From assembly GCA_965202585.1 (NCBI GenBank), contig OZ241827.1, positions 59,024,001 through 59,088,000 on the forward strand: a stretch of 64,000 bases of DNA, read 5' to 3'. Source of the DNA: Thalia democratica (taxonomy: Eukaryota). The notes beneath the pieces were generated by a model that saw only the letters and a program-made list of their open reading frames with translations, was not told the origin of the DNA and did not search any database. How positions within the stretch are numbered: position 1 is the stretch's first letter; each line of letters begins with the position of its first letter. The position numbers were made by a program, and so were the translations under genes. Shown piece after piece: positions 20,909 through 63,983 of the stretch.

Positions 20909-22888
20909 TCAACAATCAAAGACTTTGATCTCGCACAATCCGTACAGCTCCGCATCGCAAGGATAGTCGTGCAGCCTCAAGTTGTCCCTCATCTGGGCGC
21001 AGTCCTCTCCGTGGTTGTCGTTGGGCTCCCCAGAATCCCATTTGAACAGGGTCCCGCCCCAATTGGGGTCGAAGTACTCGCTGTTGCTAGGAAACCTCCA
21101 CGCACCCTCCTCCCCATGGTCGTCTAGGCCCACCCACAGAGAACTCACGCCCGTCTGCGTCACCAAGTTCTTGATTGACCTGTTATGACGTCATAAACAT
21201 TAAAAGTGGCTCATCGAATGGGTTTGTAGTTAATTTTTTTAAGGGTTTTAGCTGCTTAAGTTACAACATAAACTTTGTTAAGTCATTTACTCTTTAAAGT
21301 TAACATTAACATGATTGCTAAATCTTTGAATTGTTTTAATTTTTTTTTTTTTTTTGATGATCTATAGAGTTTAGTAAGGTTTATTACTTTTTAAACTCAT
21401 ACTGTTAAAAAAGATATAAAACTTAAAGTTTATTATGTATTAATTTACTTTGATTTCAGAACACGAAAAAAAAACTATAGATAGTTTATATACTTATCCT
21501 AAGCTAAATTAAAAATTAGTATATTAATGCAGACTATCAAAAATAAAGCTAATATTTTAGTCTGGATAAGAACATTTAGAGACAAATTAAGATAATTAGG
21601 AATATAATAACTTTCTATAAATTTGACAAAGCTAATACTAAAAGCTTTCAAAAAAAAAATTGTTTTCAATTTTTTCTTATCTAAGTGTATGTATAACACG
21701 GAACGCTTCTTTTTAAGTAGTTTGAATCATTAACAAAATTACAAAAGTTCATACTATTATCCTACTTTTCATTATAATTCAAATATACTAAAAAAGCAAT
21801 AAAGCAGCCGTTTGTTATATTACTAAAAAGCGTAATAATATCATAACTGAAACTAAAACTGTTTCCAAGCTAACTATTTCAAGTTGCATACATACTCGTG
21901 ATACTGGGAAGCCTCTGACTTCATGTTGACGCTTATGAGGTCGCCCCCCATCGCACCACATTGCACGCGACAGTTGAAGTAGCTACCTGAACTCGGTGTG
22001 ATCCTGAACTCGTACCTCACTGTGCAAAAATTATATTTGTTTTCAGTGTAGGAACTGTTAATACATCAATATTCTTTTATTATATCCGTAGAATTCAATA
22101 TATGTTTTATATAAGTATAATTTTAGATACTATTAAATTTTTTTTTGTGATTTTTTGTATTTTAGAAAAATATTTAAGGGTGTAAAGTTTAATAGTCTCA
22201 TTTTTCATAAAGTTTTTGTTTTAGAGTTAAAATTTTGACTTTAAAGTTTTTTTTTCCTTTTTTTCATTTTAGCTCATTATAATTTTGTTTAAGTTGGGTA
22301 TGCAACTCGATGACCGAAAGGTCTTTTTGTGTATCCAGGTCCTTGAACCAAAAAACTATTCGTTTTTTTTCAATAAACCACCTACTTACCACTTGCTATA
22401 CACCAATTTACGTCCAGGACAAAACGTTAAAATCTATTCGTGGTGTGGGACTTGATAACCGAAAGGTTTTTTTGTGCACCAGGTTCTAGAACCAAACACG
22501 TTGAGCGTCTTTTTTTTGTCGTTCACTAAACTATAACTACAAACCCTATATGCTTACAAACATATGATGTTCACATTAGCTTATGTTTTATCAAATTGTT
22601 GTAATAAACTGACTGAGGATCTGCCCTGTCTAACAGAGCAGTGAAACAAATGTTTTTTATGCAAACATATATAAAAACAATACAATTACATATGTACTAG
22701 TCAATTACACTTTTTACTTTAACTGGACACAAACAAAGCAACAAACCATTGTAAGACTGTTCAACCTCATCTACTTTATCCTGTACAGCCGGGCAAGTGG
22801 ATTGAATGAAAGTGGAGACATCAGATTTCAAGCTGAAAACTCCACTTGTCAGTCCGATAGCAAAACACAAAGTTACAAGTATTTTCAT
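20909..22888 (-). CDS. Secreted single-domain C-type lectin (178 aa), EPN-type, TC14-like
   Basis: Exons 22888-22747, 22019-21896 and 21179-20909 (537 nt, phases match). Signal peptide MKILVTLCFAIGLTSG. CTLD: YFNCRVQCGAMGGDLIS..LWVGLDD..WDSGEPNDNHGEDCAQM..LHDYPC..GLCEIKVFDC*. The exon-1 donor (AATG|gtttgt) was chosen for phase compatibility. Confidence 0.88.
22296..22378 (+). repeat. SINE-like ~120-bp dispersed repeat, partial copy (lectin intron 1)
   Basis: gggtatgcaactcgatgaccgaaaggtc..ccaggtccttgaaccaaa..caataaa; aligns by eye with the copies at 22412 and 25901. Confidence 0.6.
22412..22530 (+). repeat. SINE-like ~120-bp dispersed repeat (lectin intron 1)
   Basis: gtccaggacaaaacgttaaaa..ggtgtgggacttgataaccgaaagg..gtgcaccaggttctagaacc..gtcgttcactaaa. 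Confidence 0.65.
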
Positions 22889-28033: not shown

Positions 28034-29168
28034 TACACGTTTTTGGGTCTACTTTTGGTTGAAGTAAAGTTTTAAAACTATTAAAGTAGTATAAAATCAT
28101 TGAAAAGATACGGTAAAACTAATTTAGTTGTTTTTTTAATAAAATCGTTTTAAGGATGATAAAAAGTTTATCTAGTTGATTTTTCATGTCAAATAAAAAT
28201 TAATAATATTTAAGATGCTTAAAAATTCCCGGTTATTTAGTAGTTTTTGTTTGAAATTCCTGGGTTTGTGGCAACCCTGCAGACACAAGAAATAGACGCT
28301 GTGAATTAACATTCAATATTTAAGACATGAGTAGTCTATATCTCTCTCTTACTGAGGTCTCCATATGTTAAAATCATATAAGTTTATTACTTTATAGGTA
28401 AAACAATAATTTCCTTAAGTCAATATAAAACATTCAGTAACAGGCAGCAAAGGCCCATCAAATTTGAATGTAGCGAATTAAAAACAAATTAGAATGTTCC
28501 AGAAATTACTAAGCACAATTTTTCAAAACAGGTATATATATATTCTGTGCGGACTGTTATAGGCGAAAGTACGGGCATTAGGTAATATTTAGGGGAAATT
28601 CAACTGTCATGTGCAACTTACCATTTTTATATTTAGACTGTTAAGTTTACATGGTATATTGCAGCACTGTTCCTACTGAACATCTTTGGCTGCAGTTGTT
28701 TAGTTTTGAAAATGTTCTCATCTATAATATTAGGCAATTGAGGTATAGAGATTATACAGAAGAATATCGAGAACATCTATAACATTATTCCTACCCATAT
28801 CTCTCACCCCTAACCCACCTTACTAAGATACATTTAAATAAACAGATACAAATTATTACTTCAATTAGAATTTTAGCCCATTAAAGCGACCTTAGAACTG
28901 CAGCTGGCGCAACTTCTTTTAGCAGCTAAACTATATTCCAGTTTATTTGTCGAGCTTAACTTTTTTGTAAGCTTACAGCTTTTAATAGCGTAAATAATTT
29001 TTAATTTTCTAAACTCAAAAAAAACAGGCTCAACTATAATTTGAATAACTCAAATGATTAAGTAATTCTTAACTATATAGTTTTAATTTAGTACATATTA
29101 GACACAATAAATCTTTTTTTATTTGAATAAGTTTTATTACGCATTTACTATACAAATACAAACAAATC

Positions 29169-29310
29169 GGCGTTGCCATTCCCCGCTCTAGAACACGATT
29201 CAGCTTCAGTTGGTGACAACCCTCTTGAAGCATTCTGCTCGTACATTCAGGTGCTTTCCCAACTTCCGGATGGTGACAACCCCGCAACGCCACTTGCTCG
29301 TACAGTTTCA
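29169..29310. other. GC-rich structured block preceding the hairpin array
   Basis: Perfect 8-bp inverted repeat ggcgttgc (29169) / gcaacgcc (29284); two direct copies of tggtgacaaccc...gctcgtaca; CpG-rich within AT-rich surroundings. Confidence 0.55.
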
Positions 29311-29740
29311 GTAAACAACCTGAGAAACTTTTTCTAGCCAGTAAGGAAGCTCAACATAGCGTAATTAATTTAAAAGAATTATTCATGTCATAATCATTTT
29401 AGTTATCAAAAATTGAAAAATTTATAAAAAATTAAATAATAAGGAATCATTATAGATTTATATAAACTTTTTGCTCTACCAAAAAAATAAATTTTTCAAC
29501 TGCTTAGTCAAAAGCTTTATAGAACTTCTTAAACTTTAGTAAAGCATCACTTTTAAAAGCAAATTTTGGTAGTGTCTTAAAAGGAACAAATTTCCTAACA
29601 TGACAAACTAGAACTAACATGGACAAATGTCAGGTAATATTTATTAATCTGACTAAAACAAATGAAAGTTTTTGAACAACTTTTTTATAAGTATTAACAA
29701 TTTAACTTTTTCAAATCTTTAAAAATTAAAAATTGAACAA

Positions 29741-32700
29741 CTGTACATTTGGTTGGGGTCTGATTAAACGATCAGAACTTTACCATTATCCCATTGTAGT
29801 AGGCTGACTTTTAAAAACGTAAGACGATTATAAAACACTGTACAAGTAGTAAAAGATTTAATATCTGTCGATCATCAAATCATAGCAACAAAATTACCAA
29901 AAATAACATCGAAACAAAACATTTAAAAAACGACTTTAATTGTAAATCACAACATATAAAACTGTACAATAGGTAGGGATCTAATCAAAAGATCAGAATT
30001 TTACCAAGATCCCATAGTGGTAACCGTAGCTCACAATTCAAAAAAAAAGTAATACACTGTACAAGCAATAAAGGAGTTAACACGGGCAAATTATCATTGT
30101 GATACAAATCAATTATTACGTCATAGCAACTTATGCGTGGTCTCAATTTAAAAAAACTGTACAACAGGTAGGGGTCTGATCTAAAAATCAGAATTTTACC
30201 AAGATCCCTATGAAATGCTTATTGGATAAAAAAAATCAGCTGCGTAAAATAAAACAAAATATGTACGTAATATACACAAAAGCAAAGAGTCAGGTGTGTG
30301 ATGGCCGCAGTACTCGGAAAGCTTTTTGATTTTTTGAAAAATGTAAAATATTTTGATGAGAACCAAATCACAACAAGAAAAAAACTGTACATTTGACAAG
30401 GGATTCGCACGTTTTAGCGTGGAAAATTCGTCAACTAAGCCCTTTATAAATGTTTATCCTTACGTCGTGAAAGAAGCGGAATCTCAGAAAAACAACAACA
30501 AAACAATATTTACATTTGGTAGGAAATTGATCGGTGGATCACATTTTACCCAGATTCCTACCCAGTGCTGGTTTGCAATCAATGAAGGAGCGAGATAACT
30601 AACATGTAAAATATACAGTCTGCCTGTCCGCAGCACTCAGACAGCGCATGGTGCGAGTTTGAAATTTTTAAAATTTTTCTTAATAAAAGATGGCGCGCAA
30701 AACAACAATACAAGTAAAACTGTACATTCGACAAGGGATTCACACGCTTCACGTGGAAAATTCGTCAACTAAGCCCTTTATAACCTGTCAAGTGATTTGT
30801 CATTTAGTTTATAATCAGGCGAAAAAGAAAACGTTAAACACAAATTACAATTCAAAAAACAAAAAAATTTACAATGCAGTATATACACTTGAAAAGTAAA
30901 ACATAATTGAAAAACTGTACAATAGGTAGGGATCTGATCAAAAGATCAGAATTTTACCAAGATCCCATTTGTAAGGTTCATTGTCATAAAAATTAGCAAC
31001 TGCAAGTAAGCAAGGCAAATAAAATAAAACGTACTAAGTCAAGAGTCTGCTGTTACGCAGCACTCTGAGAGTATGTTTAATGTGCGGTTTTGAAAAGTTT
31101 CAACTTTAGATCAAGCTTAGCAAAAGATAGCTTAAATCAGAAAAAAATTACAACAAATGAAACTGTACATTTGACAAGGGATTCACACGCTCCACGTGGA
31201 AAATTCGTCAACAAAACCCTTTAAATTGATTTATAGTAAACAATTGGACGAAAAAAAAGTCAACACAAATAACAACTCAAAAAACATCAATATTTACAAT
31301 TCGGTAGGGGTTTGTGTTTCAACAAACTTTTCCAAGATCCCTAGGTGCTCTGCAGTCCTTCCAGTCAGGTTAAAATACACACGCTGATCACTGTACAACA
31401 AAAATAAAGGGAAACACCCCAAATCGATATTCAATTGACAAAATGGGCATTCTTTATACAACTTTATATATGTACAACAGAAGGGATGAGCCTTTTGACT
31501 CATTTTACACCCTTTAACAGAAGTAGTGCGAAGACAACTGCGAAAGATAAGATAACAAAGAAAATTTAGCTGTACAAATATACAATTTGAGTTTTTTATG
31601 CCGATAACAATCATCAAGAGCAATAGCTGTTTTAGCTTAGGATTATAAATATGATACAAACATTAAATCAAAGATACTTTTATTTATCTTAATTTAATTA
31701 AACAAAATCAACTTGGTTGATAATGCAATATGCACAACCTAAAACAACATTCCTAAGCAAAACAACTGACGTGCTTGAAAAAGAATAAAAACTTGGTTAA
31801 CTAAAAATTAATGCGATTTAGACATTAAAGTAAAATACATTATAAAATGGTGCGATCCATTGGATGAGCAGTTGGACGAACATCTTTAGCTTAGGGAAAA
31901 CCAAAAATTAAGTCTGTACAATTGAAGACGTTAAATAAAGTTCAAATACACGGAAAATCAATATTAGGTACTCTTCCCTAGTTTCTTTTTATAACCTTTT
32001 TGAGAGAACTTATATTAGTCAAAAACGGAATTTAAAATACAACTGAACAACACAAAAAATCTGTACAATTGAAGGGGACCGCTCTTTTACGAGGGTTCTT
32101 TTCAACAACCCTCTTTTATTAATGATAATACTGCTGATGACGCTACTTCTAAACTTCAAATACACAAAAGTCCTGTACAATTAATATGAAGTACTCACAT
32201 GGTTCTTTTTGCACCCACGCAACAACGAAATTCTGAACAAAACTGAATTACACAAAAAAATTTGTACAACTGAAGGGGACCACTCTACACGAAGGTTCTT
32301 TTCAAAATCCCTTTTGCTTAATGATATTAGTGTGTTGTTCCAAAAACAATATAAAACCTCAAAATAAAAACTGTACATTTGAAAGGGGACCATTTTCAGG
32401 TTATGGTGCTTTTCAAAGCCCTTTAATTACTGATATCACTGCATTCTTTAAAAATATATAAAAAAATCAACAAGAATATGTATACAAGAAAGAAGCCATG
32501 TATGGTCCTTTTAAGAAGCATCTGTCTGTATTTAGCTATGCAAAAAAAAAACTGTACAATTGAAAGGGGACCATTTTCAGGTAAATGGTGCTTTTCAAAG
32601 CCCTTTAGACATAATTGAACGTATATAATAAATCTTGGGACACAAAAAAATATCTGTACATGTGAAAGGGGGACCAAACACTGCTAGTAGCAGCGTGGCT

Positions 32701-33760
32701 CTTTTCAAAGCCCTTTTGATTAATGATATCAGATTCAAAAACTTATTAAAATTCAACAACAAGAAATATGAACATAAGAAGCCATGTAAGAGTTCTTTAG
32801 GGAGCATCTGTTCTACATAAGTTTGTCTGTGTTTAGCTATCGACAAAAAAAAAGCAAATCTGTACAATTGAAAGGGGACCATTTTCAGTTTATGGTACTT
32901 TTCAAAGCCCTTTTTATGACCAACCTTGAACAATGATACAATTTGAGACACAATAAAAAACAATCTGTACATGTGAAAGGGGGCCAAACACTGCTAGTAG
33001 CAGCGTGGCTCTTTTCAAATCCCTTTTGATTACCTTTGAACCTTTTGAAGCAACACTAATTCATTTACAAAACACAATTTTTAAGGGACTGAGAACCCTC
33101 TTTCATAGAGTGGGAACAGCAAAAATTCTAAAAGTTCGGATGGTAAATGCGTTACACTAAAGTAAGTTATAAACACAAAACAAAATATATACATGACACA
33201 ATTTTTTAGGGACTGAGAACCCTCTTATACAAGTTTTTTCACTAAAGGTCAGAAGCAATAAAAATTTACAAAGAAACTTAAAAATTAAAGTTCCTCAAAC
33301 CTGCATTTTGGCATCAATAAAATGTGGGTCAAATAATCAACAACAAAAAAACAAAATATATACAAAACACAATTTTTTAGGGACTGAGAACCCTCTTATA
33401 GAAGTTTTTTCACTAAAGGTCAAAAGCAATAAAGATATATTTGTACAAAGAAACTTAAAAATTAAAGTTCCTCAAACCTGCATTTTGGCATCAATAAAAA
33501 TGTGGGTTAAATAATCAACAACAAAAAAACAAAATATACACAAAACACAATTTTTTAGGGACTGAGAACCCTCTTATAGAAGTTTTTCCACTAAAGGTTG
33601 ATCAGAAACAAAAAAAATTATACAAAGAGAGTTTGACAAACACAAGTTCTGGCGAACCATTTGGTCATCTGAAGTGCATCAACAATAAAAGCTCAGCATA
33701 AATAAAAAACTATAAATAAAATATATACAATACACAATTTTTTAGGGACTGAGAACCCTA
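29741..33760. repeat. Array of ~25 hairpin units (CTGTACA leader + AGGG..CCCT stem); candidate ncRNA cluster
   Basis: Class A at 29741, 29962, 30157, ~30507, 30915, ~31293, 31471; class B at 30385, 30720, 31163; class C at 32061, 32262, 32371, 32552, 32654, 32860, 32965; class D at 33072, 33196, 33367, 33545, 33732; plus degenerate units. Spacers are A-rich and variable. Confidence 0.85.
33072..33760 (+). repeat. Five copies of the near-invariant core ACACAATTTTT(T/A)AGGGACTGAGAACCCT at 124-187 bp spacing
   Basis: Read directly at 33072, 33196, 33367, 33545 and 33732; the two central spacers are near-identical, the outer ones are not. Confidence 0.9.
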
Positions 33761-34410
33761 TTTTTCAGCGACTTATGTTTAAAATTTTAGGCGAAAACAA
33801 CAAAAAAAATCATTATATTTATAAATGTACAACCCACATCATTAGCCTACACACATTGTTGTCCAAAAAAATATTATTTCTAAAACAAGACTTTGGTTCA
33901 TTAAAAAAAAAGCAATTAACTATTACTTTTAAATATCTTTTGTTCGCAGAGTAAGAATTCAGCTTGATAAAAAATTAGTTTGCATGACAACAATGTGCAT
34001 AGTTACCAGGGTGTGCCGATGGGAGGCTGATGTGAGAAAAACTTTTAATAAATTTTCCAATAAATAAGTTAAACAAAAATAGTTGTCTAAATTCAACTGC
34101 AAATTGAAAAATTTATTAAAAGTTTTAACACCCCGCAGTACTTAAACAAAAAACTTCAAAACTTTTTATACAAACAGAGTTCCAAAGGTTTAATAAGAAA
34201 TTTCTTTTAGGTTTTGAAAATACAAGTTTTAAGGTCTATTTTTAGTATAAAATTAAGTTAAATTTTAAAAACTGCATTAAATAGTATTACAACATTGATA
34301 AAAAACTGTTAAGCTACTTTAAATGTGTTTTTTAGTAGAAATAAATTACTTCTATGGTTATTTATTTGTGTTAAATTAAAACTTTTTTTACATGTAAAAA
34401 TTTTTTTAAA

Positions 34411-34465
34411 TTCCAGGTTTTTTTTTATTCAAAATTTCAAAATTCCAGGTTTTTTGGCAACCCTG
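34411..34465. mobile_element. Isolated right end of the CAGGGTTGCCA TIR family
   Basis: ttccagg repeats followed by tggcaaccctg (34455-34465); a similar end gtggcaaccctg lies at 28268-28279. Confidence 0.45.
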
Positions 34466-36829
34466 TCCAACGATTAAAAAAAAATTAAGTTGATAAAGTT
34501 TTGTAAATCTAACTCTATAAATATATTGTTGGTTTTTACTATGTTTCTTTTTTTTTTTGAGAAAATAATGGCTGAGAAAGATAAACACAAGTTTTTTTTG
34601 GATAAAAAAAAAGCATTAATGGAAAAAGCTTACTTCAAAATTAAAGCATTATGACAAAAAAGGATAGCTTCACTGACACTTTGTACCACTGAAAAGTTGT
34701 TGCTAACTGTACTTAAGATCACAAATTCTTTGATTTATCTGCAAGAAAAAAATAGTTGAGTGGTATGCAAAAATCAACATAAATAATTATAACTAGAAAT
34801 AATGAAGAGTAATACACTACAATTTGGGGTTAATATTTATTCTATTTACTGCAACATGCCTTGTAATAACACTCAAGTAACTTAATTAAGCAAATTTACA
34901 ATATTTGCCTTATATTTTAACTCTTAACTACTACAAAAATTTCAAATTATTTTTAACTGGTATTTTCTACACAAGAATTTAATTGTAAATTTTTTCAACT
35001 TTTAATGTTGATAACTAACAAAAAAAGTGATATAATTTTTATCACACAATCTAAGCCATTATCTTACATCATACAAGCTAACATAACAAAAAAAGTATTA
35101 CTATTGTACATGTAAATTACCTGTAATCTTGTAAAAAAAACTATGAAAAGTGCACTTTGAATGAAGATATGTGAAAATTTAAGAATTTAGTGTAATTTAT
35201 TTATAATTTCCAGAAATTCAGGCTGATCTGACTCTTATTTAGAAGAAATAATTTTTTGAACCATAAGGTAACTTATAATCCAGGAAATTTTAATTAAAAC
35301 CAGTATTAAACTATCTTTTTTATTTTGAAAAACTCAGTTTTTTTAAAAACAGGTTAATAGATAATTTAAAATTAATTAAAACAATATAATTTTTTTTAAT
35401 TAATCTCTGAAAATTACAAGGGATTTCTTTTATAAACTAAACTTTGAATTAAAAACAACAAAATACTGATTTAGCTAGACTATAGCTGTTAATGGCAGTT
35501 TAAAACATCAATTATGGAACATATTGTTGTAAGAAACATATTAATAACTTAATAGATAATAAAATTTAATTTAAATGTAATATTAAAACAAATATTCTCT
35601 AAAAATATCCTATTATTATAAAAGCTGTCAATAGATAATCCAATAAAAACAAAACTTTCATTTCAAAAAATAAATGGAAAAAAATTTAATACAACAAAAA
35701 GTCGTTCTATAACATTTATTTAACAAAATAGAACCCTGTAAAAAAGAGTTGAAGTCATGTTATAGCTAGTTTTATTTATTGTTACTGAAATTTTGAATAC
35801 ACTACAGTGAACAAAATTTTTATAAAAATAGATTTTTTTATATTGATTTGCTTTTTTTGACTTAAACAAATATGTCAACATAGAAGCAAAAAATAAGCAA
35901 ATTGACTCAGTATATTCTTTTATTGGATTTGTAAACTTAGTAACTATTGTACATAAACAAATAGCATATTCTACAATGATATAAAAATACTAAATGCAAA
36001 AAGAGGTCTTTAAACTAAACAACTTAAATTCAAAATAGATATTTTATATGGAATCACAGGTTACTTAATAAGATTGCCACTATATATTAAAAGTAGAAGT
36101 AATTACATATACCTGTGTTATACTAGGAATATTTTAATTAATAATCAAGTAGGGAATAACTAATTTGATAATAAATAATGTAAACTATAATTTTAATGAA
36201 ATATAATTGAAGATGACTACTTAGGACTTTTGACTAAAACAACATGAAATAGTAGATGATAACTAATTTTTATGAAATAAAACTAACAGCAAACATTGCC
36301 TCTTTTTTTTTTTGAATGGGTGAAACTTACAACTTTAAAGATACAACATGGACATCATTAATGAGTTATAAATAAAATATTTTTTATTTTTATTTTTACA
36401 ATATTTAAAATTTTAATAGGTTTTGTTCATTGTAATTAACTTAAAATTTCATCATTGGTGGTAAACCTGTGTTTAATAGAGTTCAAAAAATTATATTGCC
36501 AATAAAACCTGAAACTTTTGACTATTTTTAAAACTATGATTTTTTTTTAATTTAGTTGTTATATTTCATCAAATTTATTTACTTATACTTTTATAACTTT
36601 ATATTTTTTGCCATAAAAATTAATTTCAACTAAATCAACTAGCTTATGTATGTTAATGAAAAGGAAATTATAATGAGTTAGATGTTTTAATTTAAAAACA
36701 TATTGAAAGCTAGGACCTTTTACTTAAAATAAAAACAGACTTCACATTCTTAATTATGAGTTAGAATTAATGGTTAATTATGGTCACCTCTTTTTTAAGT
36801 ATAAGATAATACAGCATGAGTGAATAATA

Positions 36830-43317: not shown

Positions 43318-49152
<5,835 letters not shown>

Positions 49153-50193: not shown

Positions 50194-50952
50194 CAGGGGC
50201 GTCGCGTGGGGTGTTGCACTGCTGCAACTGCACCACCTTAAAATTTTGTAAGAAAAAATTAAGTATCTATAACGTTTTCGTTATTTTTTAGAACAAAATC
50301 TCTTATAAAACTCCAATTTAGAAAACGACCATTTTGCTCACTTCACTGCCGCAAACTCTTAGCTGACTGCCGCAAATGAACTCAAAAGCTAAGCAGAGCA
50401 CAGGCAACTCGAGAAGAGGCAACTCGAGAAGAAGCAACTCGAGAAGAAGCAACTCGAGAAGAGGCAACTCGAGAAGAAGCAACTCGAGAAGAAGCAACTC
50501 GAGAAGAAGCAACTCGAGAAGAAGCAACTCGAGAAGAAGCAACTCGAGAAGAAGCAACTCGAGAAGAAGCAACTCGAGAAGAAGCAACTCGAGAAGAAGC
50601 AACTCGAGAAGAAGCAACTCGACAAGAAGCAACTCGACAAGAAGCAACTCGAGAAGAAGCAACTCGAGAAGAAGCAACTCGAGAAGAAGCAACTCGAGAA
50701 GAAGCAACTCGAGAAGAAGCAACTCGAGAAGAGGCAACTCGAGAAGAAGCAACTCGAGAATAGGCGACTCGAGGAAAAGCAACTCGAGAATTAGCAACTC
50801 GAGCAGAAGCAACTTAAGAAGAAGCAACTCGAGCAGAAGCTACTCTAGCAGAGGCAACTCGAGCAGGGACAACTCAAGTAGGGGTATATCGATCACCTTC
50901 AACTCGGTTTTTTTTTTGCACCACCTAACAAAAATACCACGCGACGCCACTG
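50194..50952. mobile_element. hAT-family MITE (759 bp) with perfect 8-bp TSD
   Basis: ctatgtta|caggggcgtcgcgtgg ... ccacgcgacgccactg|ctatgtta; TIR match 15/16; TSD copies at 50186-50193 and 50953-50960. Confidence 0.93.
50403..50880. repeat. 15-bp minisatellite (gcaactcgagaagaa), about 32 copies, inside the hAT MITE
   Basis: Read directly; homogeneous centre, degenerate toward 50760-50880. Confidence 0.97.
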
Positions 50953-53900
50953 CTATGTTATGTAAAACGTCTACAACTTCAACACAAAAAAACTAGCTTT
51001 TGTAAATAAATATATGTTTAAATCATGTAAAACTTTTTTATAGAAAAAAAACCTGGTTGTAGATTTTTCGAGAAATGAAATTACTTTATTAGTAACTATT
51101 TTGTTTAAAAAACTAAAATCATTCTTTTCGTCTTTGTATCAAAAATTTAATGCATTATAACAAATGTTACATCGGCAAGTTACTTTTCATAGTAACATAA
51201 CTTAACAATTTCTCCTAAACACTTTCGCATGCAAGCTTTAACTTATGAAGCGCATAAAAATTACCGTATCATAGATGTAATTACAGTTTGTTTAAAATAA
51301 ACCCTTATAAAAGTTTATTGGAATAAATATCGTACTTAATTTGATAGGAAAACTCTAACTGCATATTTTAGAAACAAGGTTGAAAAACAAAACATAAAAA
51401 GTTTACAGAAAACAATAAAATTGCATTTATTAGATAAACTTAAAGATCGAAGAAAACATCGGCGAAAGTCTACAGAGCCTTAGCCTGCACTTTTGTATGC
51501 CGTGAGACAAGCTTAAGTTAACGAAAAAGTTTGATAATGCTTTAAAGGTGGTACATTTATAAGTGCAGCGGGTATAGTAGTAAGGTTAATTTTTTTTTAG
51601 TTCTTAATATAACTCAAATGGGGTGAAGTAAAAAATAGTAGTACATTAAAAACATATTAACTTTTATCTTAAACCAATTTTACTCAATACTCTTTATTTA
51701 TATCCTTAACCTTAACCGATCAAAACAAAACATATAACAAATAAACAGAAGAAAAAAATATTAATTAAAATTTATAATTAAAAGAAGTAAAATTTTAGCC
51801 AATAGGCAGCGCCTGAAATTTACAGCTGATAGTTTTTAAATTATGCACCGAATAGTTTTATGTGTCCTTTAAAAGTTTTATTGAAACGTTACTGACTACG
51901 CGACAAATATCAACAAACTAAATATATTTCAAGCAGTTCTCATCAGTAGAATACAAAGTAACAAGAGATAAAAACTATTTAAAAACTTATATAGTTACAA
52001 AGTTATCAAAAGAGTAAAAGACAAAAACAATTATCAAAATTAAAAAGTACTTTGGCTTATAATTTACACATGTTTAACTCAGTAAATACACATTTTAAAA
52101 ACTATTCTAATTAATCAAAAATAAAATTATGTGGCTAATTGAGACGATTTCTCATATATTCTAAAAAATTCATTAACGATTTTCAATTACATATAAATTA
52201 GTAAGCTCCTTTAAAACTTAAGTAAGAAGTTTAAGTTAACAAATACTATACTAGCTTTGCAAAATTAATTGCTTTGTTTTGTCAATAAAAAAAAAGAATA
52301 GTTATTTAAATCGTAGTGAAAATTGTATAAGCGTTTGTATATGCAACATATTAGACTTGTTTAGAATGTTTTATGAGTTATGATAAAAAACATTTTTCTA
52401 AACTTGATTTAAAGGTTGTTGAGTTAAAAAAAAATCTGTAGTTAAATTAGGTAAAATCTATTGAAATGTTTCAAGCTATTTCGACCAAATTTTTAGTAGA
52501 GATAAATAAGTAAAACCGACATATAGTTAGATGAACTAGAAGATCTTGAAATTGAATATATAATCTTAATTATAAATAACATAAACTACTTCATAAACAA
52601 ATTTTCACCTTTGTACTATTTTACAGCAATTATGAGTTTTAATTTAAGAATCCTATTTTAGTTTAACAATCAAAGTTTTGAAACAAAACAAATTTAATTA
52701 CTGAAATAAACAAATAAAGACCCTAAAATAAAAATATTAAAATATAGAGAAATCAACTCTACAATAACTTTAAAGTAATTATTTTAATCATACGGTATTA
52801 TTTTAATTACTAATCTCGTATAAAAACGTTTTTAATTCATTGCATTAACTATTTAAATAAATAACTTTTTGCATCTTTTTAGATGCTATTAAAATTTAAT
52901 TACGTATATAACACAAAATAAAGATTTTTTTACTTTTTTATTTAGTCAAAATTATTCCTACCAAGATTTGTTATGTACAATATTTTGTTCAACATATCTT
53001 ACTTTAGAACAAAATTAATAAAAGCCTTATACTTAAATTATTTTATCTAAAACCAGCTTATAGATCACGTTTTATGATCAACTAGATCAAGTTTTGAATT
53101 AAAACACGTTAATTTTGATTGATTAGTTTTGGTTGCAGAAGCAATACTTATATTTATACTGCACGTGCTTTGCGCGTGTTTCAGTAAAAGTAAAGAAAGT
53201 TGTTAAACAAACGCAATTTTCAAACACGCTTTGTTCGTATTTTAACATCACTAGTGAAACAGACACCTCGTTTGAAAACTGAATGAAGTCACGGTTTTAT
53301 CACGCGTTTGTCCACTTTAGGAACCACAATTTTTTGTTAGGAAGTTATAAAATTAAAGCAACTTTTGAGTAAGAATTATTTGATAAGAAAAAATAATCGG
53401 TTAAAGTTTCAGAAAAAAAGTTCACTAAAACAATTAAATCTATTTTCTGAATATCCAAAGCTTCAAAACTTTTTGGTTTAAGCATTAATTTTTTGGTTTC
53501 TGGAATTAAATTTAATCTTCAAAGTATGCTTTGTGGGCATTTGAAAATTATTTTTTGTTTTTTTGTTTAAACAAACCCCCGATTATTTAAACTTTATAGA
53601 ATTTGATTTAACCTAAGCTGCATGACTGCAACTTTTAATCTTTTTATTATTCTCTTTTTTTAGTAACCTCCAACCACATAGGTCAGAAAAACTATTTAAT
53701 TTTTCAAACAGCCAAATGTCAAATTTGTATAATGCAATTAAACTTTAATCTTGTACAATGTTTTAGAAACTCGCAAATGTGTAATTCGAAAACTAAAGTT
53801 CAGAAATTTCTAAAAACAAGTACACATAGTCATAGGATTGTATGCCATAGAAAATAAAAAAAAATTGACAAAAGAAATTGATATTTGACATTGATAGTGT

Positions 53901-53974: not shown

Positions 53975-56630
53975 TCAAACATCATCAGTATCTCTTACTC
54001 TTAAATGTTTGTACTTGAGTGTTTTAAACAAACTTAACATAAGTTACACTTTCATTTTACAAAGCAATGACATACGAGGTATTTGCTCAGCAATCTATTT
54101 AAAACGTCATCACGCGTCAGCCCTGCCGTTTTTAAACCACTTAACGAGTTCGTAGCTTATTCAATTGTAACAAAAAAGGAATCTTGTTTGTAAACAGATA
54201 TGTAAATATGTATATTATATAAATTGTATATACTGTAATACGTAAATGTGTAATTTATTCACCGTAAAAGGCGAATAAAAAGTTCTCATGTACTAATGAA
54301 AAAGAAAACAAGGAAAATATCTCATGTACTAACAGAATTAAAGGCAGCTTTTGAAAATACAAAGTTAAAACAGTTTTAGCAAGTATTATCTAAGTTCTCT
54401 ACACAATTAAGCAAAAGTTAGACGTTAAACAAAACATAAAAAAAGACTTATGACAAGAAATGTTAATTTGTAATATAACTGTGCAGAAAAAAAAACAAAA
54501 CAGTTGTTTTATATGAAAGTATAACTGTACAAAATACATTTTTCATTACTATCATTCTATAAAAAAAAGAAAAACAAACTGTTCAATGAAACATAAATTT
54601 TTCAGTTGAAGCTATTTACTTGGTATATCAGTGTTAACATTAACTTAAGATGTGCAAGTTTTAATACAGTAAAAAACACATTTTATATTTATAACTAGTG
54701 TTAAAACAAGCATAATGTAGTAGTTCTGTAAGTATATAAAGTTTTGTACAAAAATTGAATTAATTTTGAAACAAATACATTTATTTCTATTAATTTTTAA
54801 TTAAGTAAATGTTACACAAAGCAACATTAATAATTAAAAGTCTTAAAAATACATAGAAAAAAAATTGCAAAAATCAACTCAAACGTCCTCGAAAGACGGC
54901 GGAGGCGTCTCATCTTTTTCAGTTGTCAGCTGCAGTTTACCTTTTATTACGTCATAATAGTTCGGAGGGAGAACTGGCTTGCTCTTTAGCTCCATAGTAA
55001 GCGCGATGCTGTACGGAGGAGGATTTCTTGCTGCTAATTCAGCTGTATTTTTATTAAAACTTTTATTGATTATTTGTAAACCTGTATTTTGCAATTGTTT
55101 TGTTACCTTAATTAAGTTTTTCGCTTTTAAGTTAAGTTTAAAAAAGGTTTAACATTAAAAATATTTTGTTTTTGCAAATTGACTTTTACTTAACTTTTAA
55201 CATACCCTCATGTTGTATTTTTCTTTTCATTCTGTATTTTATTCCACAATATACAATTAGTATAAACAACAGAGCAGTAATCGATGAACATATTGCAACA
55301 ATTGGTCTGAAATTTTTAAGTTAAATTCAGAATTAAAAAGGCGAATTTAGAGTTGATTTTAGTTTCTGATTAACAAATTATAAAAAGAGATTATTTCTTT
55401 AAATTTAACTTTAAATTCGTTTAAAACTTTGTATATATGTATTTCTTACCTTTTCTGTATGTGAAACTTTAAGCGATTTATAAAGTTCAAGTTGAGTGTC
55501 TAAGCTCATATTTACTAAAATTTTTGTTTAATAGACATTAAAAAAACATTTAAAACAACCATATTAAATGAGGTTGAAGCTGAAAAATAAAGTTTAAACA
55601 GATAATTAACTACGTGAGAGCGTTTTAAAATTAAGGTAATTTCAACAAGTTTAACAGATAAGTGAACAATAAAATCAAAATTACACTTGTTGCCTATCAG
55701 GATCGCAGCAGACGTAGGGAGGTGTATTTTTCTGCCTGAAAATCGGTTCGCAGCAGCTCAGGTCAGACTGGTGACAGTTCAGTGCCGTGCAGAATTTTGT
55801 TGCTTCATCACTAATTGATGCACTAGTGTTTGACACTGCAAAAAACATTGTTGTTTACAACAGCTTTAGTTTGTTTTATTAAACATAAATTGACTGTCAT
55901 GTTAATTGGTAGGTTGTTAACTAAAAAAAAAGTTTTTAATTATTGTTTTAAAACAAAAGTGTAAGAAAAAGTTTACGTACTTAAATAAAGAAATGTCAAG
56001 CTGATCGACTGACGTAAACTTGCCTTTTATGAGGTAAGTAAAAATTAAAGTCAAAATGGTGGACCTAAAAGTTATTATTATTTTTGTAACTTTTTAAAAC
56101 CATTTATTTAATGCATGATTTTTTTAGCATTTAGACGATTGATTTTAATGATTAAAAAAAATAACATATTATGAACATGTTTTATTAAAACTTTTAAAAG
56201 TTAATTGGAAAAAAACAAAACAATTTTTATAAACTGTTAGGCTAACAACACCCCTTTTGAGCGCAAACTTTCAATATAACAAAACCTCTGCGGCAACTAA
56301 ACATAAAAAATAAACAAAACACTTAGGTTTTAAGTGCTTATACATGTGACATTAATTAACAATTGGTCAAATTAGTGAATTTATTTTATTGATTAGGTTA
56401 GGTGGGAAATACTTTACGCATAAATTTTTAAAAAGTATTTGAAAACCTAATTTAGAAAAAAAAAATGTTTAGTCTGTTAACTAACAAATACGTTTATTGA
56501 CATTTTTAGCAAATAATAGTTTAAAATAACTTTATTTTTAAATGTATTAAAAATTTATCAAATATATTTTTTGACTAACCTATTTTAGCCGTAACAACAC
56601 TTATGTCCATTGTAGTACTCATTTAGATTT
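53975..56630. repeat. Segmental duplication, copy 1 (paralogue at ~61330-64000, offset ~7.35 kb)
   Basis: Collinear from tcagtatctcttactcttaaatgtt through all exons and introns of the PY-motif gene. Confidence 0.92.
54879..56622 (-). CDS. WBP1/VOPP1/TMEM92 (Shisa-like, six-Cys) single-pass PY-motif adaptor, copy 1 (~181 aa)
   Basis: Exons 56622-56580 (tentative), 55835-55687, 55499-55450, 55306-55206, 55081-54879. Ectodomain C-x4-C-x6-CC-x12-CC (FCTALNCHQSDLSCCEPIFRQKNTPPYVCCD); TM IVAICSSITALLFILIVYCGI followed by KYRMKRK; tail PPPY, LPPNY, PPPSF. Confidence 0.82.
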
Positions 56631-61036: not shown

Positions 61037-62210
61037 AAAAGTGGGGCAAGGTATAACATTCTGTAAGAAGCCATAATGACTTTACAAAAAAAAAGTGCAT
61101 TTTTAAAACTCATGCAGACTATAAGAAACTGTATAGAACGAAAATTTACATATGGCTCGGTTTATAAAGTAATTGTAACTAACAATTAAAGTAAGTTTTA
61201 AGGTTATTCACGTGTTATGTTTGTATTTTTCTTCTATTTATAAAACACCTAGTGGTATTTTATATTAAAAACGAAGTTTTAGTTAAAGCTTTAACTTGTA
61301 ATATATTCAAATCTTGTTAACTTTTAGTCTACATTATCAGTATCTCTTACTCTTAAATGTTCCTACTTGAACCTTTTCAGCATTTTTAACAAAAGCTAAA
61401 TCTTTTATTTTACAAAACAGTGACGTACGAAGTAGTTGATACTGCTCAGCATTCTGTATGAAACGTCATCACCCGTCATCTCCAGCAAACAAACTCGTAG
61501 CTTATTCAATTGAAACAAAAAAGAAATCTATGTTTACAAACGAATACGTAAATGTGTACAATATAAGGTGAATAAAAATAACAGTTTATTTGTTTATGAA
61601 ATTTAAAGAAATAATCTCACGTGCCTACGAAAATAAACAAGAAATATATCTCATGTACTAATAGCATTTAAGGCAGCTTTAGAAAGTATAAAGTCAAAAT
61701 AGTTTTAGCAAATATTATCTCCACACAATCATACAAAAGTTAGACGTTAAACGAAAAATAAAAAAGACTCATGACAAGAAATGTTAATTTGTAATATAAT
61801 TGTGCAGAATTATAAAAAAATTATACAAAACAGTTGTTTTATAAGTACATATTTACAAAAAAAAGTATAACTGTACAAAATACATTGTGCATTACTATTA
61901 TTTTATAAAAAAAAAACTGTTCAATGAAAGATAAGTTGTTACGTCGAAGCTATTTACTTTGTATATAAGTATTAACATTAACATAAGATGTGCAAGTTTT
62001 AAAACAGTAAAAAACACATTTTATATTTGTAATTAGTGTTAAAACAAGCACATTGTAGCAGTTCTGTAAGTATACAAAGTTATGAGATAGAATTATTTTT
62101 GAAATAAATACATTTATTTCTATCAACTTTTAATTAAGTTATTTTTTTACAAAGCCACATTATTAATTGAAAGTCCTAAAAAAACACAGAAAAAAGATGC
62201 TGCAAAAAAG

Positions 62211-63983
62211 TCATATATTCTCGAAAGGCGGCGGAGGCGTCTCATCTTTTTCAGTTGTCAGCTGCAGTTTACCTTTTATTACGTCATAATAGTTCGGAGG
62301 GAGAACTGGCTTGCTTTTTAGCTCCATAGTAAGCGCGACGCTGTAAGGAGGAGGATTTCTTGCTGCTAATTCAGCTGTATTTTTATTAAAGTTTTTATTG
62401 ATTGTTTGTAAACCTGTATTTTGCAATTGTTTTGTTTCCTTAATTAAGTCTTTTACTTTTAAAATAAGTTTAAAAAAGGTTTAACATTAAAAAACATTTA
62501 CTTTTTGTAAATTAACTTTTACCTAACTTTTAACATACCCTCATGTTGTATTTTTCTTTTCATTCTGTATGTAATCCCACAATATACAACTAATATAAAC
62601 AACAGAGCAGTAATCGATGAACATATTGCAACAATTGGTCTGAAATTTTTAAGTTAAATTCAGAATTAAAAAGGCGAATTTAGAGTTGATTTTAGTTTTT
62701 GTTTAACAAACTATAGAAACAGATTTTTTTTTAAATTTAACTTTAACTAAACGATTAGTTTAAAACTTTGTATATATGTATTTCTTACCTTTTCTGTATG
62801 TGAAACTTTAAGCGATTTATAAAGTTCAAATTGAGTGTCTAAGCTTATATTTACTAAAATTTTTGTTTAATAGACATTTAAAAAAAAAAAAAACATTTTA
62901 AACAACAATATTAAATGAGGTTGAAGCTGAAGAATTAAGTTTAAACAGACAATTAACTACGTGAGAGCGTTTTAAAATTAAGGTAATTTCAACAAGTTTA
63001 ACAGATAAGTGAACAATAAAATCAAAATAATTACACTTGTTGCCTATCAGGATCGCAGCAGACGTAGGGAGGTGTATTTTTCTGCCTGAAAATCGGTTCG
63101 CAGCAACTCAGGCCGGACTGGTGACAGTTCAGTGCCGTGCAGAATTTTGTTGCTTCATCACTAATAGACGTACTAGTGTTTGACACTGCAAAAAAAATTA
63201 TTGTTTACATCAGCTTTAGTTTGTTTTATTCAACATAAATTGACTGTCATGTTAATTGGTAGGTTGTTAAATAAAAAAAAAGTTTTTATTTATTGTTTTA
63301 AAACAAAAGTGTAAGAAAAAGTTTACGTACTTAAATAAAAAAATGTCAAGTTGATCGACTGACGTAAACTTGCCTTTTATGAGGTAAATAAAAATTAAAG
63401 TCAAAATGGTAGACCTAAAAGTTATTATTATTTTTGTAACTTTTGTAAACCATTTATTTAATTCATGATTTTTTTAGCATTTAGACGATTGATTTTAATG
63501 ATTTTAAAAAAATAACATATTATGAACATGCTTTGTTAAATTAAAACATTTAAACTGTTAACAGGAAAAAATAAAACAATTTAGATAAATAAGCTAACAA
63601 CACCACTTTCGAGCGCAATTTTTTTAATTTAAAAAAACCTCTACGGCAACTAATCATAAAAATAAACGAAACAGTGAGGTTTCAAGTGCTTACGTATGTC
63701 ACATTAACTAACAATCAATCAAAGCAGTGAATTTATTTTATTGATTAGGTTAGGTGGAAAATACATTGAACAAAAATAATAAAAATGTTCGTTAAAACCT
63801 AAATTCAATAAATTTGTTTAACTTGTTAACTATTAAACACGTTTATAAACATTGTTTTAGCAAACAATAGTTTGAAATAACTTTATTTTTAAATACTTTT
63901 AAGCTTTATATATATTAATCAAATATCTTTTTTAACTTACTTATTTTAGTCGTAACAACGCTTATGCCCGTTGTAGTACTCAT
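62211..63983 (-). CDS. WBP1/VOPP1/TMEM92 (Shisa-like) PY-motif adaptor, copy 2 (~181 aa)
   Basis: Exons 63983-63941 (tentative), 63185-63037, 62838-62789, 62639-62539, 62413-62211. Intact frame with the same six Cys, TM and PPPY/LPPNY/PPPPF motifs. Confidence 0.82.

What the first reader, a model, noticed from the sequence alone, without database searches (positions are those of the whole stretch)
29741..33760. 4-kb array of ~25 hairpin units with a shared CTGTACA leader and sequence-divergent but paired stems: candidate small-RNA cluster
Seen: units begin (A)nCTGTACA(A/T)T and carry AGGG...CCC(T). A5 (30915) = ctgtacaataggtagggatctgatcaaaagatcagaattttaccaagatccc. B3 (31163) = ctgtacatttgacaagggattcacacgctccacgtggaaaattcgtcaacaaaacccttt. 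C4 (32552) = ctgtacaattgaaaggggaccattttcaggtaaatggtgcttttcaaagcccttt. The apical stem changes completely yet stays paired: ctgatc/gatcag, cacg/cgtg, accat/atggt, ctgct/agcag, acc-ctc/gag-ggt, atgag/ctcat. Spacers are poorly conserved and non-coding, and classes are ordered A/B to C to D along the array. Inference: this looks like selection on structure rather than ordinary satellite drift, i.e. a tandemly expanded family of structured RNAs or DNA elements. If read from the C, the first 22 nt of all A/B/C units share UGUACA at positions 2-7, as a miRNA seed family would. However, that segment is unpaired in the hairpin, which does not fit a canonical Drosha/Dicer duplex. I recognise no known family.
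Basis: partly seen in the sequence, partly recalled or inferred. Interest (0 to 1): 0.85.

Follow-up and report, generated by a model that had tools for sequence, protein, structure and literature searches.

The report
Transcribed array of motif-plus-hairpin RNA modules
A single-copy, unspliced, well-expressed ~4.7-kb non-coding RNA locus in an AT-rich marine animal genome consists of about 30 same-direction short modules (a CUGUACA tag, an AGGG...CCC pair and a weak two-state hairpin) that are conserved while the DNA between them has decayed; it is a modular long non-coding RNA of unknown function, not a microRNA cluster.

Summary
CTGTACA occurs 25 times in 64 kb, and 19 of these lie on the + strand within 29741-32965. 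The extended motif CTGTACAWNNGNNNRGGG gives 13 hits against 0.03 expected. A covariance model finds 17 full units, all inside the array.

Within duplicated super-units, the modules are 75-91% identical and the spacers only 38-49%. DNA-run depth across the array equals that of the flanks, so this is neither a satellite nor a high-copy transposon.

Metatranscriptome contigs, an oligo-dT library and a probable RNA run of the organism cover about 29.1-33.9 kb continuously, spacers included, with no GT..AG joints. The flanks are silent. This points to one long unspliced RNA. The strand was not shown; + is favoured.

The miRNA reading fails. Stems are 12-16 bp, 8 nt of the conserved 22-mer are unpaired on either strand, and Rfam gives no match. 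Each unit has two exclusive closings (X:X' or GGG:CCC) within 0-7 kcal/mol. Folding z-scores are modest (mean -1.5) and covariation is weak to moderate.

Best reading (about 0.4): a NORAD/hsr-omega-like multivalent RNA-binding-protein platform.

Leads: the hsr-omega nonamer ATAGGTAGG and UAGGGA, and a 12-nt exact complement of miR-133 in class C. An earlier scan note (s1-274610) described the two folds on this same stretch.

The parts
29133..33900 (+). Extent of the non-coding transcript (about 4.7 kb). The strand is inferred, not shown.
   Evidence: The probable RNA run X2 covers 29100-33900 only; 28700-29099, 33900-34099 and 34500-34699 are zero. Metatranscriptome contigs cover 29000-33924 and are zero at 33925-34121 and 34516-34900. 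No ORF with protein-like features.
29133..29371 (+). 5' unique, GC-richer domain with an internal ~50-nt duplication (TGGTGACAACCC...GCTCGTACA.TTCAG twice)
   Evidence: Sequence. Recurrent 233-nt contigs 29133/29140-29365/29371 in all runs, with highest metatranscriptome depth. Fold z -1.8 on + and -2.2 on -.
29741..29795 (+). Class A unit 1
29838..29889 (+). Class G unit 1 (leader kept, no GGG..CCC hairpin)
   Evidence: (D14)
29962..30015 (+). Class A unit 2 (contains ATAGGTAGG)
30057..30130 (+). Class G unit 2
30157..30210 (+). Class A unit 3
30289..30322 (+). E element 1 (spacer module, ...CGCAGYACTC...)
30385..30446 (+). Class B unit 1
30509..30564 (+). Class A' unit 1 (leader TTTACA)
   Evidence: (D2)
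30618..30646 (+). E element 2
30720..30781 (+). Class B unit 2
30915..30968 (+). Class A unit 4 (contains ATAGGTAGG)
31045..31071 (+). E element 3
31163..31224 (+). Class B unit 3
31294..31345 (+). Class A' unit 2 (apical stem replaced: GUUUGU/ACAAAC)
31391..31420 (+). Minimal unit: leader + AAGGG-AAACA-CCCC
31470..31518 (+). Class F unit (leader ATGTACA; stem AUGAG/CUCAU)
31570..31576 (+). Leader only (degenerate unit)
31914..31935 (+). Leader + ATTGAAG, rest decayed
   Evidence: weak model hit 31906-32007, E 0.009
32061..32118 (+). Class C3 unit a (TTGAAGGGGACC = exact complement of miR-133 nt 3-14)
32173..32222 (+). Partial C-type unit (leader + 3' arm only)
32262..32316 (+). Class C3 unit b (leader TTGTACA)
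32371..32425 (+). Class C1 unit a
32478..32525 (+). H element 1 (spacer module, leader-like TGTATACA + CCAT/ATGG hairpin)
   Evidence: (D10)
32552..32607 (+). Class C1 unit b
32654..32719 (+). Class C2 unit a (apical insertion CUGCU/AGCAG)
32766..32811 (+). H element 2
32860..32915 (+). Class C1 unit c
32965..33029 (+). Class C2 unit b
33063..33762 (+). Five class D units (cores AGGGACTGAGAACCCT at 33084, 33208, 33379, 33557, 33744). They form a young 171-187-bp tandem repeat. UGUACA has mutated to CACAA, and only the GGG:CCC mini-hairpin is kept.
   Evidence: (D1, D4)

Best explanation
The locus encodes one long, unspliced, abundant non-coding RNA, most likely read from the A-rich + strand at about 29.13-33.9 kb. 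It has a unique 5' domain followed by about 30 modules that arose by tandem duplication. Selection has kept three things in each module: (i) a single-stranded tag (A)nCUGUACA; (ii) an (A/U)AGGG(A/G) element 11-14 nt downstream, with a matching CCC(U) 30-45 nt further on; (iii) a short hairpin between them whose sequence is free to change. The 5' arm can close with either of two 3' partners (X:X' or GGG:CCC), so each module can expose either the tag-proximal arm or the CCC tail. I propose that the RNA is a multivalent platform or decoy for sequence-specific RNA-binding proteins, presenting 20-30 copies of the same short motifs on a structured scaffold, as NORAD, hsr-omega and the Xist A-repeat do. 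Candidate binders are a UGUA-reading PUF-type protein and a UAGGG-reading hnRNP A/B-type protein. What is shown: the array, its single-copy status, module-restricted conservation, transcription across spacers, absence of splicing, and the two alternative folds. What is inferred: the strand, protein binding, and the identity of the proteins.
For: Motif statistics. The family is confined to this locus within the window. Units are 0.75-0.91 identical against 0.38-0.49 for spacers within super-units of equal age. Single copy: DNA runs X1/X3/X4 show about 70-330x across the array against about 90-110x in the flanks, whereas a neighbouring repeat reaches 36,000x. Transcription: metatranscriptome contigs of up to 999 nt span units and spacers at depths of tens to hundreds, with silent flanks. 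X2 covers only 29.1-33.9 kb, and an oligo-dT cDNA library also holds the locus. No GT..AG joints. No coding potential. The two folds are near-isoenergetic. GGG:CCC is the only stem common to all classes. Fold 1 has double changes at 3 pairs, and its covariation score is reached by 1 of 500 shuffles. Strand-biased motifs: RAGGGR occurs 13 times on + and 2 on -; UAGGG 10 against 4. ATAGGTAGG, the hsr-omega repeat nonamer reported to have affinity for the hnRNP A1 homologues Hrb87F/Hrb98DE (10.1101/695486), is exact in two A units and has close variants in four. NORAD has the same plan: about 12 tandem-derived units, each a UGU-type motif plus short stem-loops, in an unspliced abundant lncRNA (PMC4947167). 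UGUACA is the first six bases of the classical hunchback-NRE Pumilio element UGUACAUA.
Against: No binding data exist. There is no canonical Pumilio element UGUANAUA on the + strand (0 hits); only 8 units have UGUACAU. The strand is not determined: contigs are unstranded, and classes B and F fold better on the - strand. Hairpin stability is barely above shuffles for B and some C units. In fold 1 the AGGG element is base-paired (G.U), which would hinder single-strand binders. Variants between individuals are not clearly depleted in units: about 14 of 60 listed variants fall in units against about 31% expected (partial tables only). No orthologous locus from another species could be examined.
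Confidence: 0.4

Rival explanations
1. Polycistronic precursor of a new family of small structured RNAs. The long RNA would be cut at or near the CUGUACA tag into hairpin RNAs of about 55-65 nt, or into about 22-nt products made by a non-canonical route, all sharing a 5' tag. This is.
For: The modules are discrete, with sharp conservation edges. The most conserved block is a 22-nt stretch (leader + 5' arm), as in miRNA paralogues. Loops are free to vary. The modules are co-oriented with regular 95-210-nt spacing.
Against: Stems are only 12-16 bp. Eight of the 22 conserved nucleotides are unpaired, and adding flanks gives no basal stem on either strand. Rfam (miRNA, snoRNA, ribozyme and snRNA families) gives nothing, even at E up to 10. 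RNA-seq contigs run evenly through the spacers. Small-RNA data could not be consulted.
Confidence: 0.2
2. MicroRNA decoy or sponge of the CDR1as / linc-MD1 type. The conserved leader + 5' arm would be a binding site for trans-acting small RNAs. Class C modules would be miR-133 sites, with the cis hairpin gating access.
For: TTGAAGGGGACC at 32069-32080 is the exact complement of miR-133 nt 3-14; a second copy has 1 mismatch. The expected count is 0.01. The miR-133 sequence was checked in PMC3603954. The 7mer-m8 seed match GGGACCA occurs 6 times in the window, 5 of them in class C units on the + strand, against 0.47 expected. C1 units add a one-base bulge opposite miRNA nt 9-10, as non-sliceable sites do.
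Against: The match was noticed post hoc among many known miRNAs. Classes A, B, D and F match no miRNA that I could identify. The site is base-paired in fold 1. No mir-133 or mir-1 gene lies in the window, and the organism's miRNAs are unknown. The five sites descend from one duplication, so they count as a single evolutionary event.
Confidence: 0.12
3. Selectively neutral transcribed tandem repeat. The modules would look conserved because of recent duplication or gene conversion, the hairpins would be incidental palindromes, and the RNA would be transcriptional noise.
For: Class D is exactly this: a 178-bp period and 94% identity including spacers. Folding z-scores are weak. Variants between individuals are not significantly depleted in units.
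Against: In the A-E-B super-units, which are of equal age, spacers have fallen to 38-49% identity while units stay at 75-91%. All 19 leaders are co-oriented. Three classes with different X and Y sequences keep the same X-Y-hairpin-X'-Y' plan. Depth in independent ocean metatranscriptomes is high.
Confidence: 0.15
4. DNA-level element: a cluster of binding sites for a DNA-binding protein at the palindrome TGTACA (enhancer, insulator or origin). The RNA would be a by-product. Alternatively, the units are small genes on the - strand, each ending in the T-run that follows TGTACAG.
For: TGTACA is a perfect palindrome. On the - strand most units are followed by T4-T10. B and F units and the 5' domain fold better on the - strand. 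Leader variants TAT(T/G/A)TACA read as perfect UGUANAUA on the - strand: 7 in 4.8 kb against 17 in the remaining 59 kb.
Against: The conserved flanks of the palindrome are asymmetric (an A-run and C on one side only) and always in one orientation. A and C units rely on 3-4 G.U pairs that exist only in + strand RNA. On the - strand, A and B units contain internal T4-T5 runs, so Pol III would stop inside them. Long contigs span the spacers.
Confidence: 0.1

Closest known systems
NORAD (LINC00657), the mammalian Pumilio-binding lncRNA
   Same: It is an unspliced, abundant RNA of about 5 kb whose central part is a dozen or more units derived by tandem duplication. Each unit keeps a short single-stranded UGU-type motif followed by short stem-loops whose pairing, not sequence, is kept, while the rest diverges (PMC4947167).
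   Different: NORAD units are about 300 nt and carry canonical UGURUAUA elements. Here units are 50-65 nt with 40-150-nt spacers, the motif is CUGUACA(W), and there are no canonical PREs on the + strand. There is no sequence similarity. The host is an invertebrate. The two-state closing of the hairpin is not described for NORAD.
hsr-omega-n of Drosophila (omega-speckle architectural lncRNA)
   Same: It has a proximal unique region followed by kilobases of fast-evolving tandem repeats in which only a short motif survives. That motif, ATAGGTAGG, is reported to have affinity for hnRNP A1 homologues (10.1101/695486). It occurs exactly in two class A units, with close variants (ACAGGTAGG, TTTGGTAGG, TTCGGTAGG) in others. 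UAGGGA-type elements recur in classes A and D.
   Different: No omega intron, ORF-omega or mir-4951 landmarks were found or expected. The nonamer is limited to class A. The invariant element here is CUGUACA, which hsr-omega lacks. The nine-base match was recalled after seeing the sequence and could be chance (about 0.03 expected in 4 kb).
Xist A-repeat and roX-box stem-loops (repeated hairpin modules of dosage-compensation lncRNAs)
   Same: These have multiple short GC-containing hairpin modules separated by A/U-rich linkers. Alternative, mutually exclusive pairings are part of the proposed mechanism. (This comparison rests on my own knowledge and was not checked here.)
   Different: The motifs, organisms and chromosomal roles differ. 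Nothing links this locus to dosage compensation.
CDR1as / linc-MD1 (natural miRNA decoys)
   Same: Repeated, duplicated modules keep a seed match. Class C carries five GGGACCA (miR-133) matches with pairing extended to nt 13-14.
   Different: Only one of five classes matches a known miRNA. The sites sit inside hairpins. The RNA is linear, not circular.
Polycistronic animal miRNA clusters
   Same: Tandem, co-oriented hairpins lie in one primary transcript, and paralogues share a 6-7-nt block at a fixed position.
   Different: The stems are about half the required length. The shared block is unpaired. No Rfam miRNA family matches.

Membership tests
Canonical animal miRNA cluster | Hairpin with about 33-35 bp of stem (at least about 22 bp for Dicer) that contains the conserved ~22-nt sequence in one arm | tested here: not met
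   Stems are 12-16 bp. The first 8 nt of the conserved 22-mer are unpaired. Adding 20-40 nt of flank gives no basal stem on either strand.
Canonical animal miRNA cluster | Match to a described miRNA family model | tested here: not met
   Rfam 15 search: no hit at gathering score in 64 kb. At E up to 10 in 29000-34500 there was only a chance bacterial sRNA hit.
Canonical animal miRNA cluster | About 22-nt reads with fixed 5' ends and 2-nt 3' overhang duplexes | not testable with these tools
   No small-RNA library of the organism was available. Logan contigs cannot hold reads of 22 nt.
NORAD-type Pumilio platform | Long, unspliced, abundant non-coding transcript built of tandem-derived units | tested here: met
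NORAD-type Pumilio platform | Many canonical Pumilio elements UGUANAUA in the units | tested here: not met
   0 on the + strand of 29101-33900. UGUANAU occurs 8 times. UGUACA is conserved, but positions 7-8 are not.
NORAD-type Pumilio platform | Binding by PUM proteins | not testable with these tools
   Needs CLIP or pull-down.
hsr-omega-type architectural lncRNA | Repeats carrying the nonamer ATAGGTAGG or close variants | tested here: inconclusive
   Exact at 29969 and 30922; variants in A3, A1, A'1 and A'2; absent from B, C, D and F.
hsr-omega-type architectural lncRNA | Omega intron splice junctions, ORF-omega, stress induction, nuclear speckles | not tested
   No splicing was seen. Localisation and induction need experiments.
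miRNA decoy (CDR1as / linc-MD1 kind) | Multiple conserved seed matches to one miRNA | tested here: inconclusive
   Five GGGACCA matches in class C against 0.47 expected for the whole window, and a 12-nt complement. The other classes are unassigned, and all five sites descend from one duplication.
Satellite DNA / transposon-internal repeat | High genomic copy number | tested here: not met
   Depth in DNA runs equals that of the single-copy flanks, whereas the adjacent repeat reaches 36,000-52,000x.
Satellite DNA / transposon-internal repeat | Homogeneous monomers including the linkers | tested here: not met
   Spacers are 38-49% identical against 75-91% for units. The feature is met only for the class D sub-array.
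Spliced-leader RNA genes | Shared leader exon followed by a GU donor and an Sm site between stem-loops | tested here: not met
   Only class A has AG|GUAGGG and an AAUUUUA stretch. B and C have neither at the aligned positions.
C/D or H/ACA snoRNA cluster; self-cleaving ribozyme array | Boxes C/D or H/ACA; hammerhead, twister, pistol or HDV cores | tested here: not met
   No Rfam hit at E up to 10. No box shared across the classes.

The most novel reading that the evidence does not exclude
The modules are the working parts of a new kind of small-RNA or riboregulator system. Each would be a two-state hairpin with an 8-nt single-stranded 'toehold' (CUGUACAA/U). It would either be excised from the polycistronic RNA as a tagged RNA of about 55-65 nt (an animal analogue of a processed guide-RNA array), or be opened by a trans-acting small RNA such as miR-133 in class C. 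In the second case the array would work as a hairpin-gated, multi-specificity decoy.
Probability: 0.12. Interest if true: 0.85.

Novelty: new variant of a known kind. Interest (0 to 1): 0.55.

Why it matters
Modular lncRNAs that titrate or organise RNA-binding proteins, such as NORAD, hsr-omega and Xist repeats, are known from only a few model animals, and their sequences are not conserved between phyla. If the proposed reading holds, this would be an independently evolved example in a marine, probably tunicate, zooplankter. It is abundant enough to appear in open-ocean metatranscriptomes. Within one locus, the contrast between conserved modules and decayed spacers marks which 50-60 nt matter. 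The invariant CUGUACA tag, the AGGG...CCC pair and the two alternative closings give directly testable hypotheses about protein or small-RNA partners. The exact 12-nt complement to miR-133 is a concrete lead for a muscle-related decoy. If the modules are instead processed into small RNAs, they would not fit any described biogenesis pathway.

Tried and rejected
- **Rfam.** Searched at gathering score (64 kb) and at E up to 10 (29000-34500). Nothing was found except a chance bacterial sRNA hit. No tRNAs.
- **Metagenome scan.** It returned more than 120 loci, all unrelated minisatellites, with no blastn similarity to the array.
- **Covariance model R1.** Searched over the whole window. No units outside the array.
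- **miRNA precursors.** Tested on both strands with flanks and rejected.
- **Canonical mir-1 and mir-133 genes** in the window: none.
- **Spliced-leader RNA reading.** Rejected: no shared GU donor or Sm site.
- **Pol III mini-genes.** Both strands have internal T4+ runs in several classes.
- **Pumilio sponge in the strict sense.** No UGUANAUA on the + strand.
- **Protein-coding or micropeptide reading.** No credible ORF.
- **Composite transposon** bounded by the direct repeats at 28254 and 34440. Rejected because the interior is single copy.
- **Salpa thompsoni small-RNA paper.** Checked for matching sequences, but no supplementary text was held.
- **Earlier scan notes.** A search by sequence gave nothing.
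- **Strand assignment from G.U pairs.** Inconclusive: 10 units favour +, 6 favour -, 1 is tied.
Full report
**What is there.** The window is AT-rich (about 25% GC). It is animal DNA: exon-like ORFs for an Ig I-set domain, a C-type lectin and an astacin are present. Public runs holding the stretch are two coded organisms plus open-ocean metagenomes and metatranscriptomes.

- CTGTACA occurs 25 times in 64 kb. Nineteen copies lie between 29741 and 32965, all in one orientation.
- The extended motif CTGTACAWNNGNNNRGGG gives 13 hits, all in the array on the + strand, against 0.03 expected.
- A covariance model built from 17 units retrieves only those units at E below 1e-5, plus one weak hit at 31906. 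It finds nothing else in the window on either strand.
- The locus also holds five class D units, several leader-only or partial units, and three further recurrent spacer modules (E, G, H).

**Not a satellite or transposon.**
- Three DNA-like runs (X1, X3, X4) cover the array at about the same depth as the unique flanks: roughly 70-330x against 90-110x.
- A neighbouring repeat at 34.1-34.5 kb reaches 36,000-52,000x.
- The short direct repeats at 28254 and 34440 belong to that high-copy element and do not make the interior a mobile unit.

**Selection on modules.**
- Same-class units are 77-94% identical, while sequence 60-180 nt away is at background level.
- A stricter test uses the A-E-B super-units, which were duplicated together and are therefore the same age. 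In their alignment the A unit is 75% identical, the B unit 91% and the three spacers 38-49%.
- Class D is different. It is a young 178-bp tandem repeat, 94% identical throughout, and it has lost UGUACA.
- Variants between individuals or strains in the partial tables fall mostly in loops and linkers of the units. They are not significantly depleted in units, so population-level constraint is unproven.

**Transcription.**
- Four ocean metatranscriptome runs hold contigs of up to 999 nt that run through units and spacers from about 29.0 to 33.9 kb, at summed depths of tens to hundreds. Depth is zero at 33925-34121 and 34516-34900.
- Run X2 of organism A has only 47 Mb of contigs, which is transcriptome-like, though its kind is not on record. 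It covers 29100-33900 and none of the flanks that the DNA runs cover.
- An oligo-dT cDNA library also holds the locus.
- No joint has GT..AG ends, so the RNA is unspliced.
- Contigs are unstranded, so the strand is not shown. I favour + at about 70%. That strand is A-rich (AT skew +0.19), with A7-A10 runs that would explain oligo-dT capture. A and C units depend on 3-4 G.U pairs that exist only on that strand. RAGGGR is 13 to 2 in its favour.
- Against +: B and F units and the 5' domain fold better on the - strand.

**Structure.**
- Every A, B and C unit has the plan leader - X - Y - apical hairpin - X' - Y'. X pairs with X': GGUA/UACC in A, UUGAC/GUCAA in B, UUGAAAGG/CUUUUCAA in C. Y pairs with Y': GGGAUC/GAUCCC in A, AAGGG/CCCUU in B, AAAGGG/CCCUUU in C.
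- The two closings cannot coexist. They differ by 0-7 kcal/mol, and X:X' is usually the more stable.
- RNAalifold keeps only GGG:CCC as the stem common to all classes. On it, 89% of cells pair, with weak covariation: 10-12 of 500 shuffles reach the observed values.
- On a model-fitted alignment, fold 1 has 67% of cells paired and double changes at three pairs (AU/GC, AU/UA, AU/UA/GC). Its covariation score is reached by 1 of 500 shuffles and exceeds all slid controls. That alignment leans towards the structure, and the changes are few inherited events.
- Thermodynamic support is modest. z-scores run from +0.1 to -3.5, with a mean of -1.5 on + and -1.1 on -.
- So hairpin potential is real and is maintained through different sequences, but these are weak, probably dynamic, structures.

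**Why it is not a miRNA cluster.**
- The stems have 12-16 bp.
- The best-conserved 22 nt (leader plus 5' arm) have 8 unpaired bases.
- Folding with flanks gives no basal stem on either strand.
- No Rfam family matches.
- Spliced-leader RNA, snoRNA, ribozyme and Pol III mini-gene readings fail on their defining features (see the membership table).

**Leads on function.**
1. UGUACA is the first six bases of the classical hunchback-NRE Pumilio element UGUACAUA. The overall plan matches NORAD: tandem-derived units, each a UGU-type motif plus short stem-loops, in an unspliced abundant lncRNA. However, positions 7-8 are not conserved, and no canonical UGUANAUA exists on the + strand.
2. Class A carries ATAGGTAGG, the one motif conserved in the hsr-omega repeats and reported to have affinity for hnRNP A1 homologues. 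UAGGGA-type elements recur in classes A and D.
3. The class C 5' arm contains TTGAAGGGGACC, the exact complement of miR-133 nt 3-14. Five of the six GGGACCA seed matches in the window are in class C units. This was noticed post hoc, and the five sites descend from one duplication.

None of these leads is a test of function.

**Verdict.**
- The small-RNA/miRNA part is not supported.
- The most likely mechanism is a multivalent protein-binding (or small-RNA-binding) lncRNA of the NORAD/hsr-omega kind, with a new module architecture. Confidence is about 0.4, because the strand, the partners and the processing are untested.

Noticed in passing
It ends two bases before the point (29133) where RNA contigs begin. 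It is followed by TT, not GT, so it is not an SL RNA gene. A hit with up to 2 mismatches somewhere in the window occurs in 36 of 100 shuffles, but the position is striking. It could be a remnant of a retro-copied trans-spliced RNA, or chance.
   Followed up: partly
window 29133-29371: The 5' domain of the transcript is GC-richer and contains a ~50-nt internal duplication. Its depth in one metatranscriptome is 3-10 times that of the array (1733 against about 130-500). A variant 233-nt contig with the same five differences recurs in all runs. Some RNA contigs join 29371 or 29599 directly to 29736, the start of the first unit, which suggests a shorter allele or a paralogous copy of the locus.
   Followed up: partly
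window 28225-28281 and 34100-34500: A very high-copy dispersed repeat (AAATTCC[AT]GG...GGCAACCCTG) flanks the locus on both sides in the same orientation. Depth is 36,000-52,000x in DNA runs, with many alternative joints. It looks MITE-like.
   Followed up: no
window 30507, 30880, 31291, 31469, 33186, 33357, 33722: Leader variants TAT(T/G/A)TACA read on the - strand as perfect Pumilio elements UGUA(A/C/U)AUA. There are 7 in 4.8 kb against 17 in the other 59 kb. This is partly explained by duplication of the D and A' units.
   Followed up: partly
window 30289-30322, 30618-30646, 31045-31071 (possibly also 31348-31369): A third recurrent element (E) lies in the A-to-B spacers: GTCTGC..CGCAGCACTC(A/T)GA with its own small hairpin. 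It has no CTGTACA leader. It is only 41% identical in the super-unit alignment, so it is much less constrained than A and B.
   Followed up: partly
window 54517-55150 and 61863-62480: Two copies about 7.3 kb apart of a segment that includes a CTGTACAAAATACATT element and a - strand ORF with PPPY and PPSF motifs (54882-55148 and 62214-62480). This looks like a local segmental duplication of a gene.
   Followed up: no
window 50376-50996 (+): A 15-bp coding minisatellite with 30.7 copies at 93% identity gives an ORF made of (S/G)NSRR repeats. It looks like an arginine/serine-rich low-complexity protein exon.
   Followed up: no
window 43318-44343 (-): A 341-aa Thr/Ser-rich ORF with eight 30-bp repeats ([10 protein letters not shown]) looks like a mucin-like exon. 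An astacin-like exon lies at 46429-46602 (-), and a C-type lectin exon at 20912-21190 (-).
   Followed up: no
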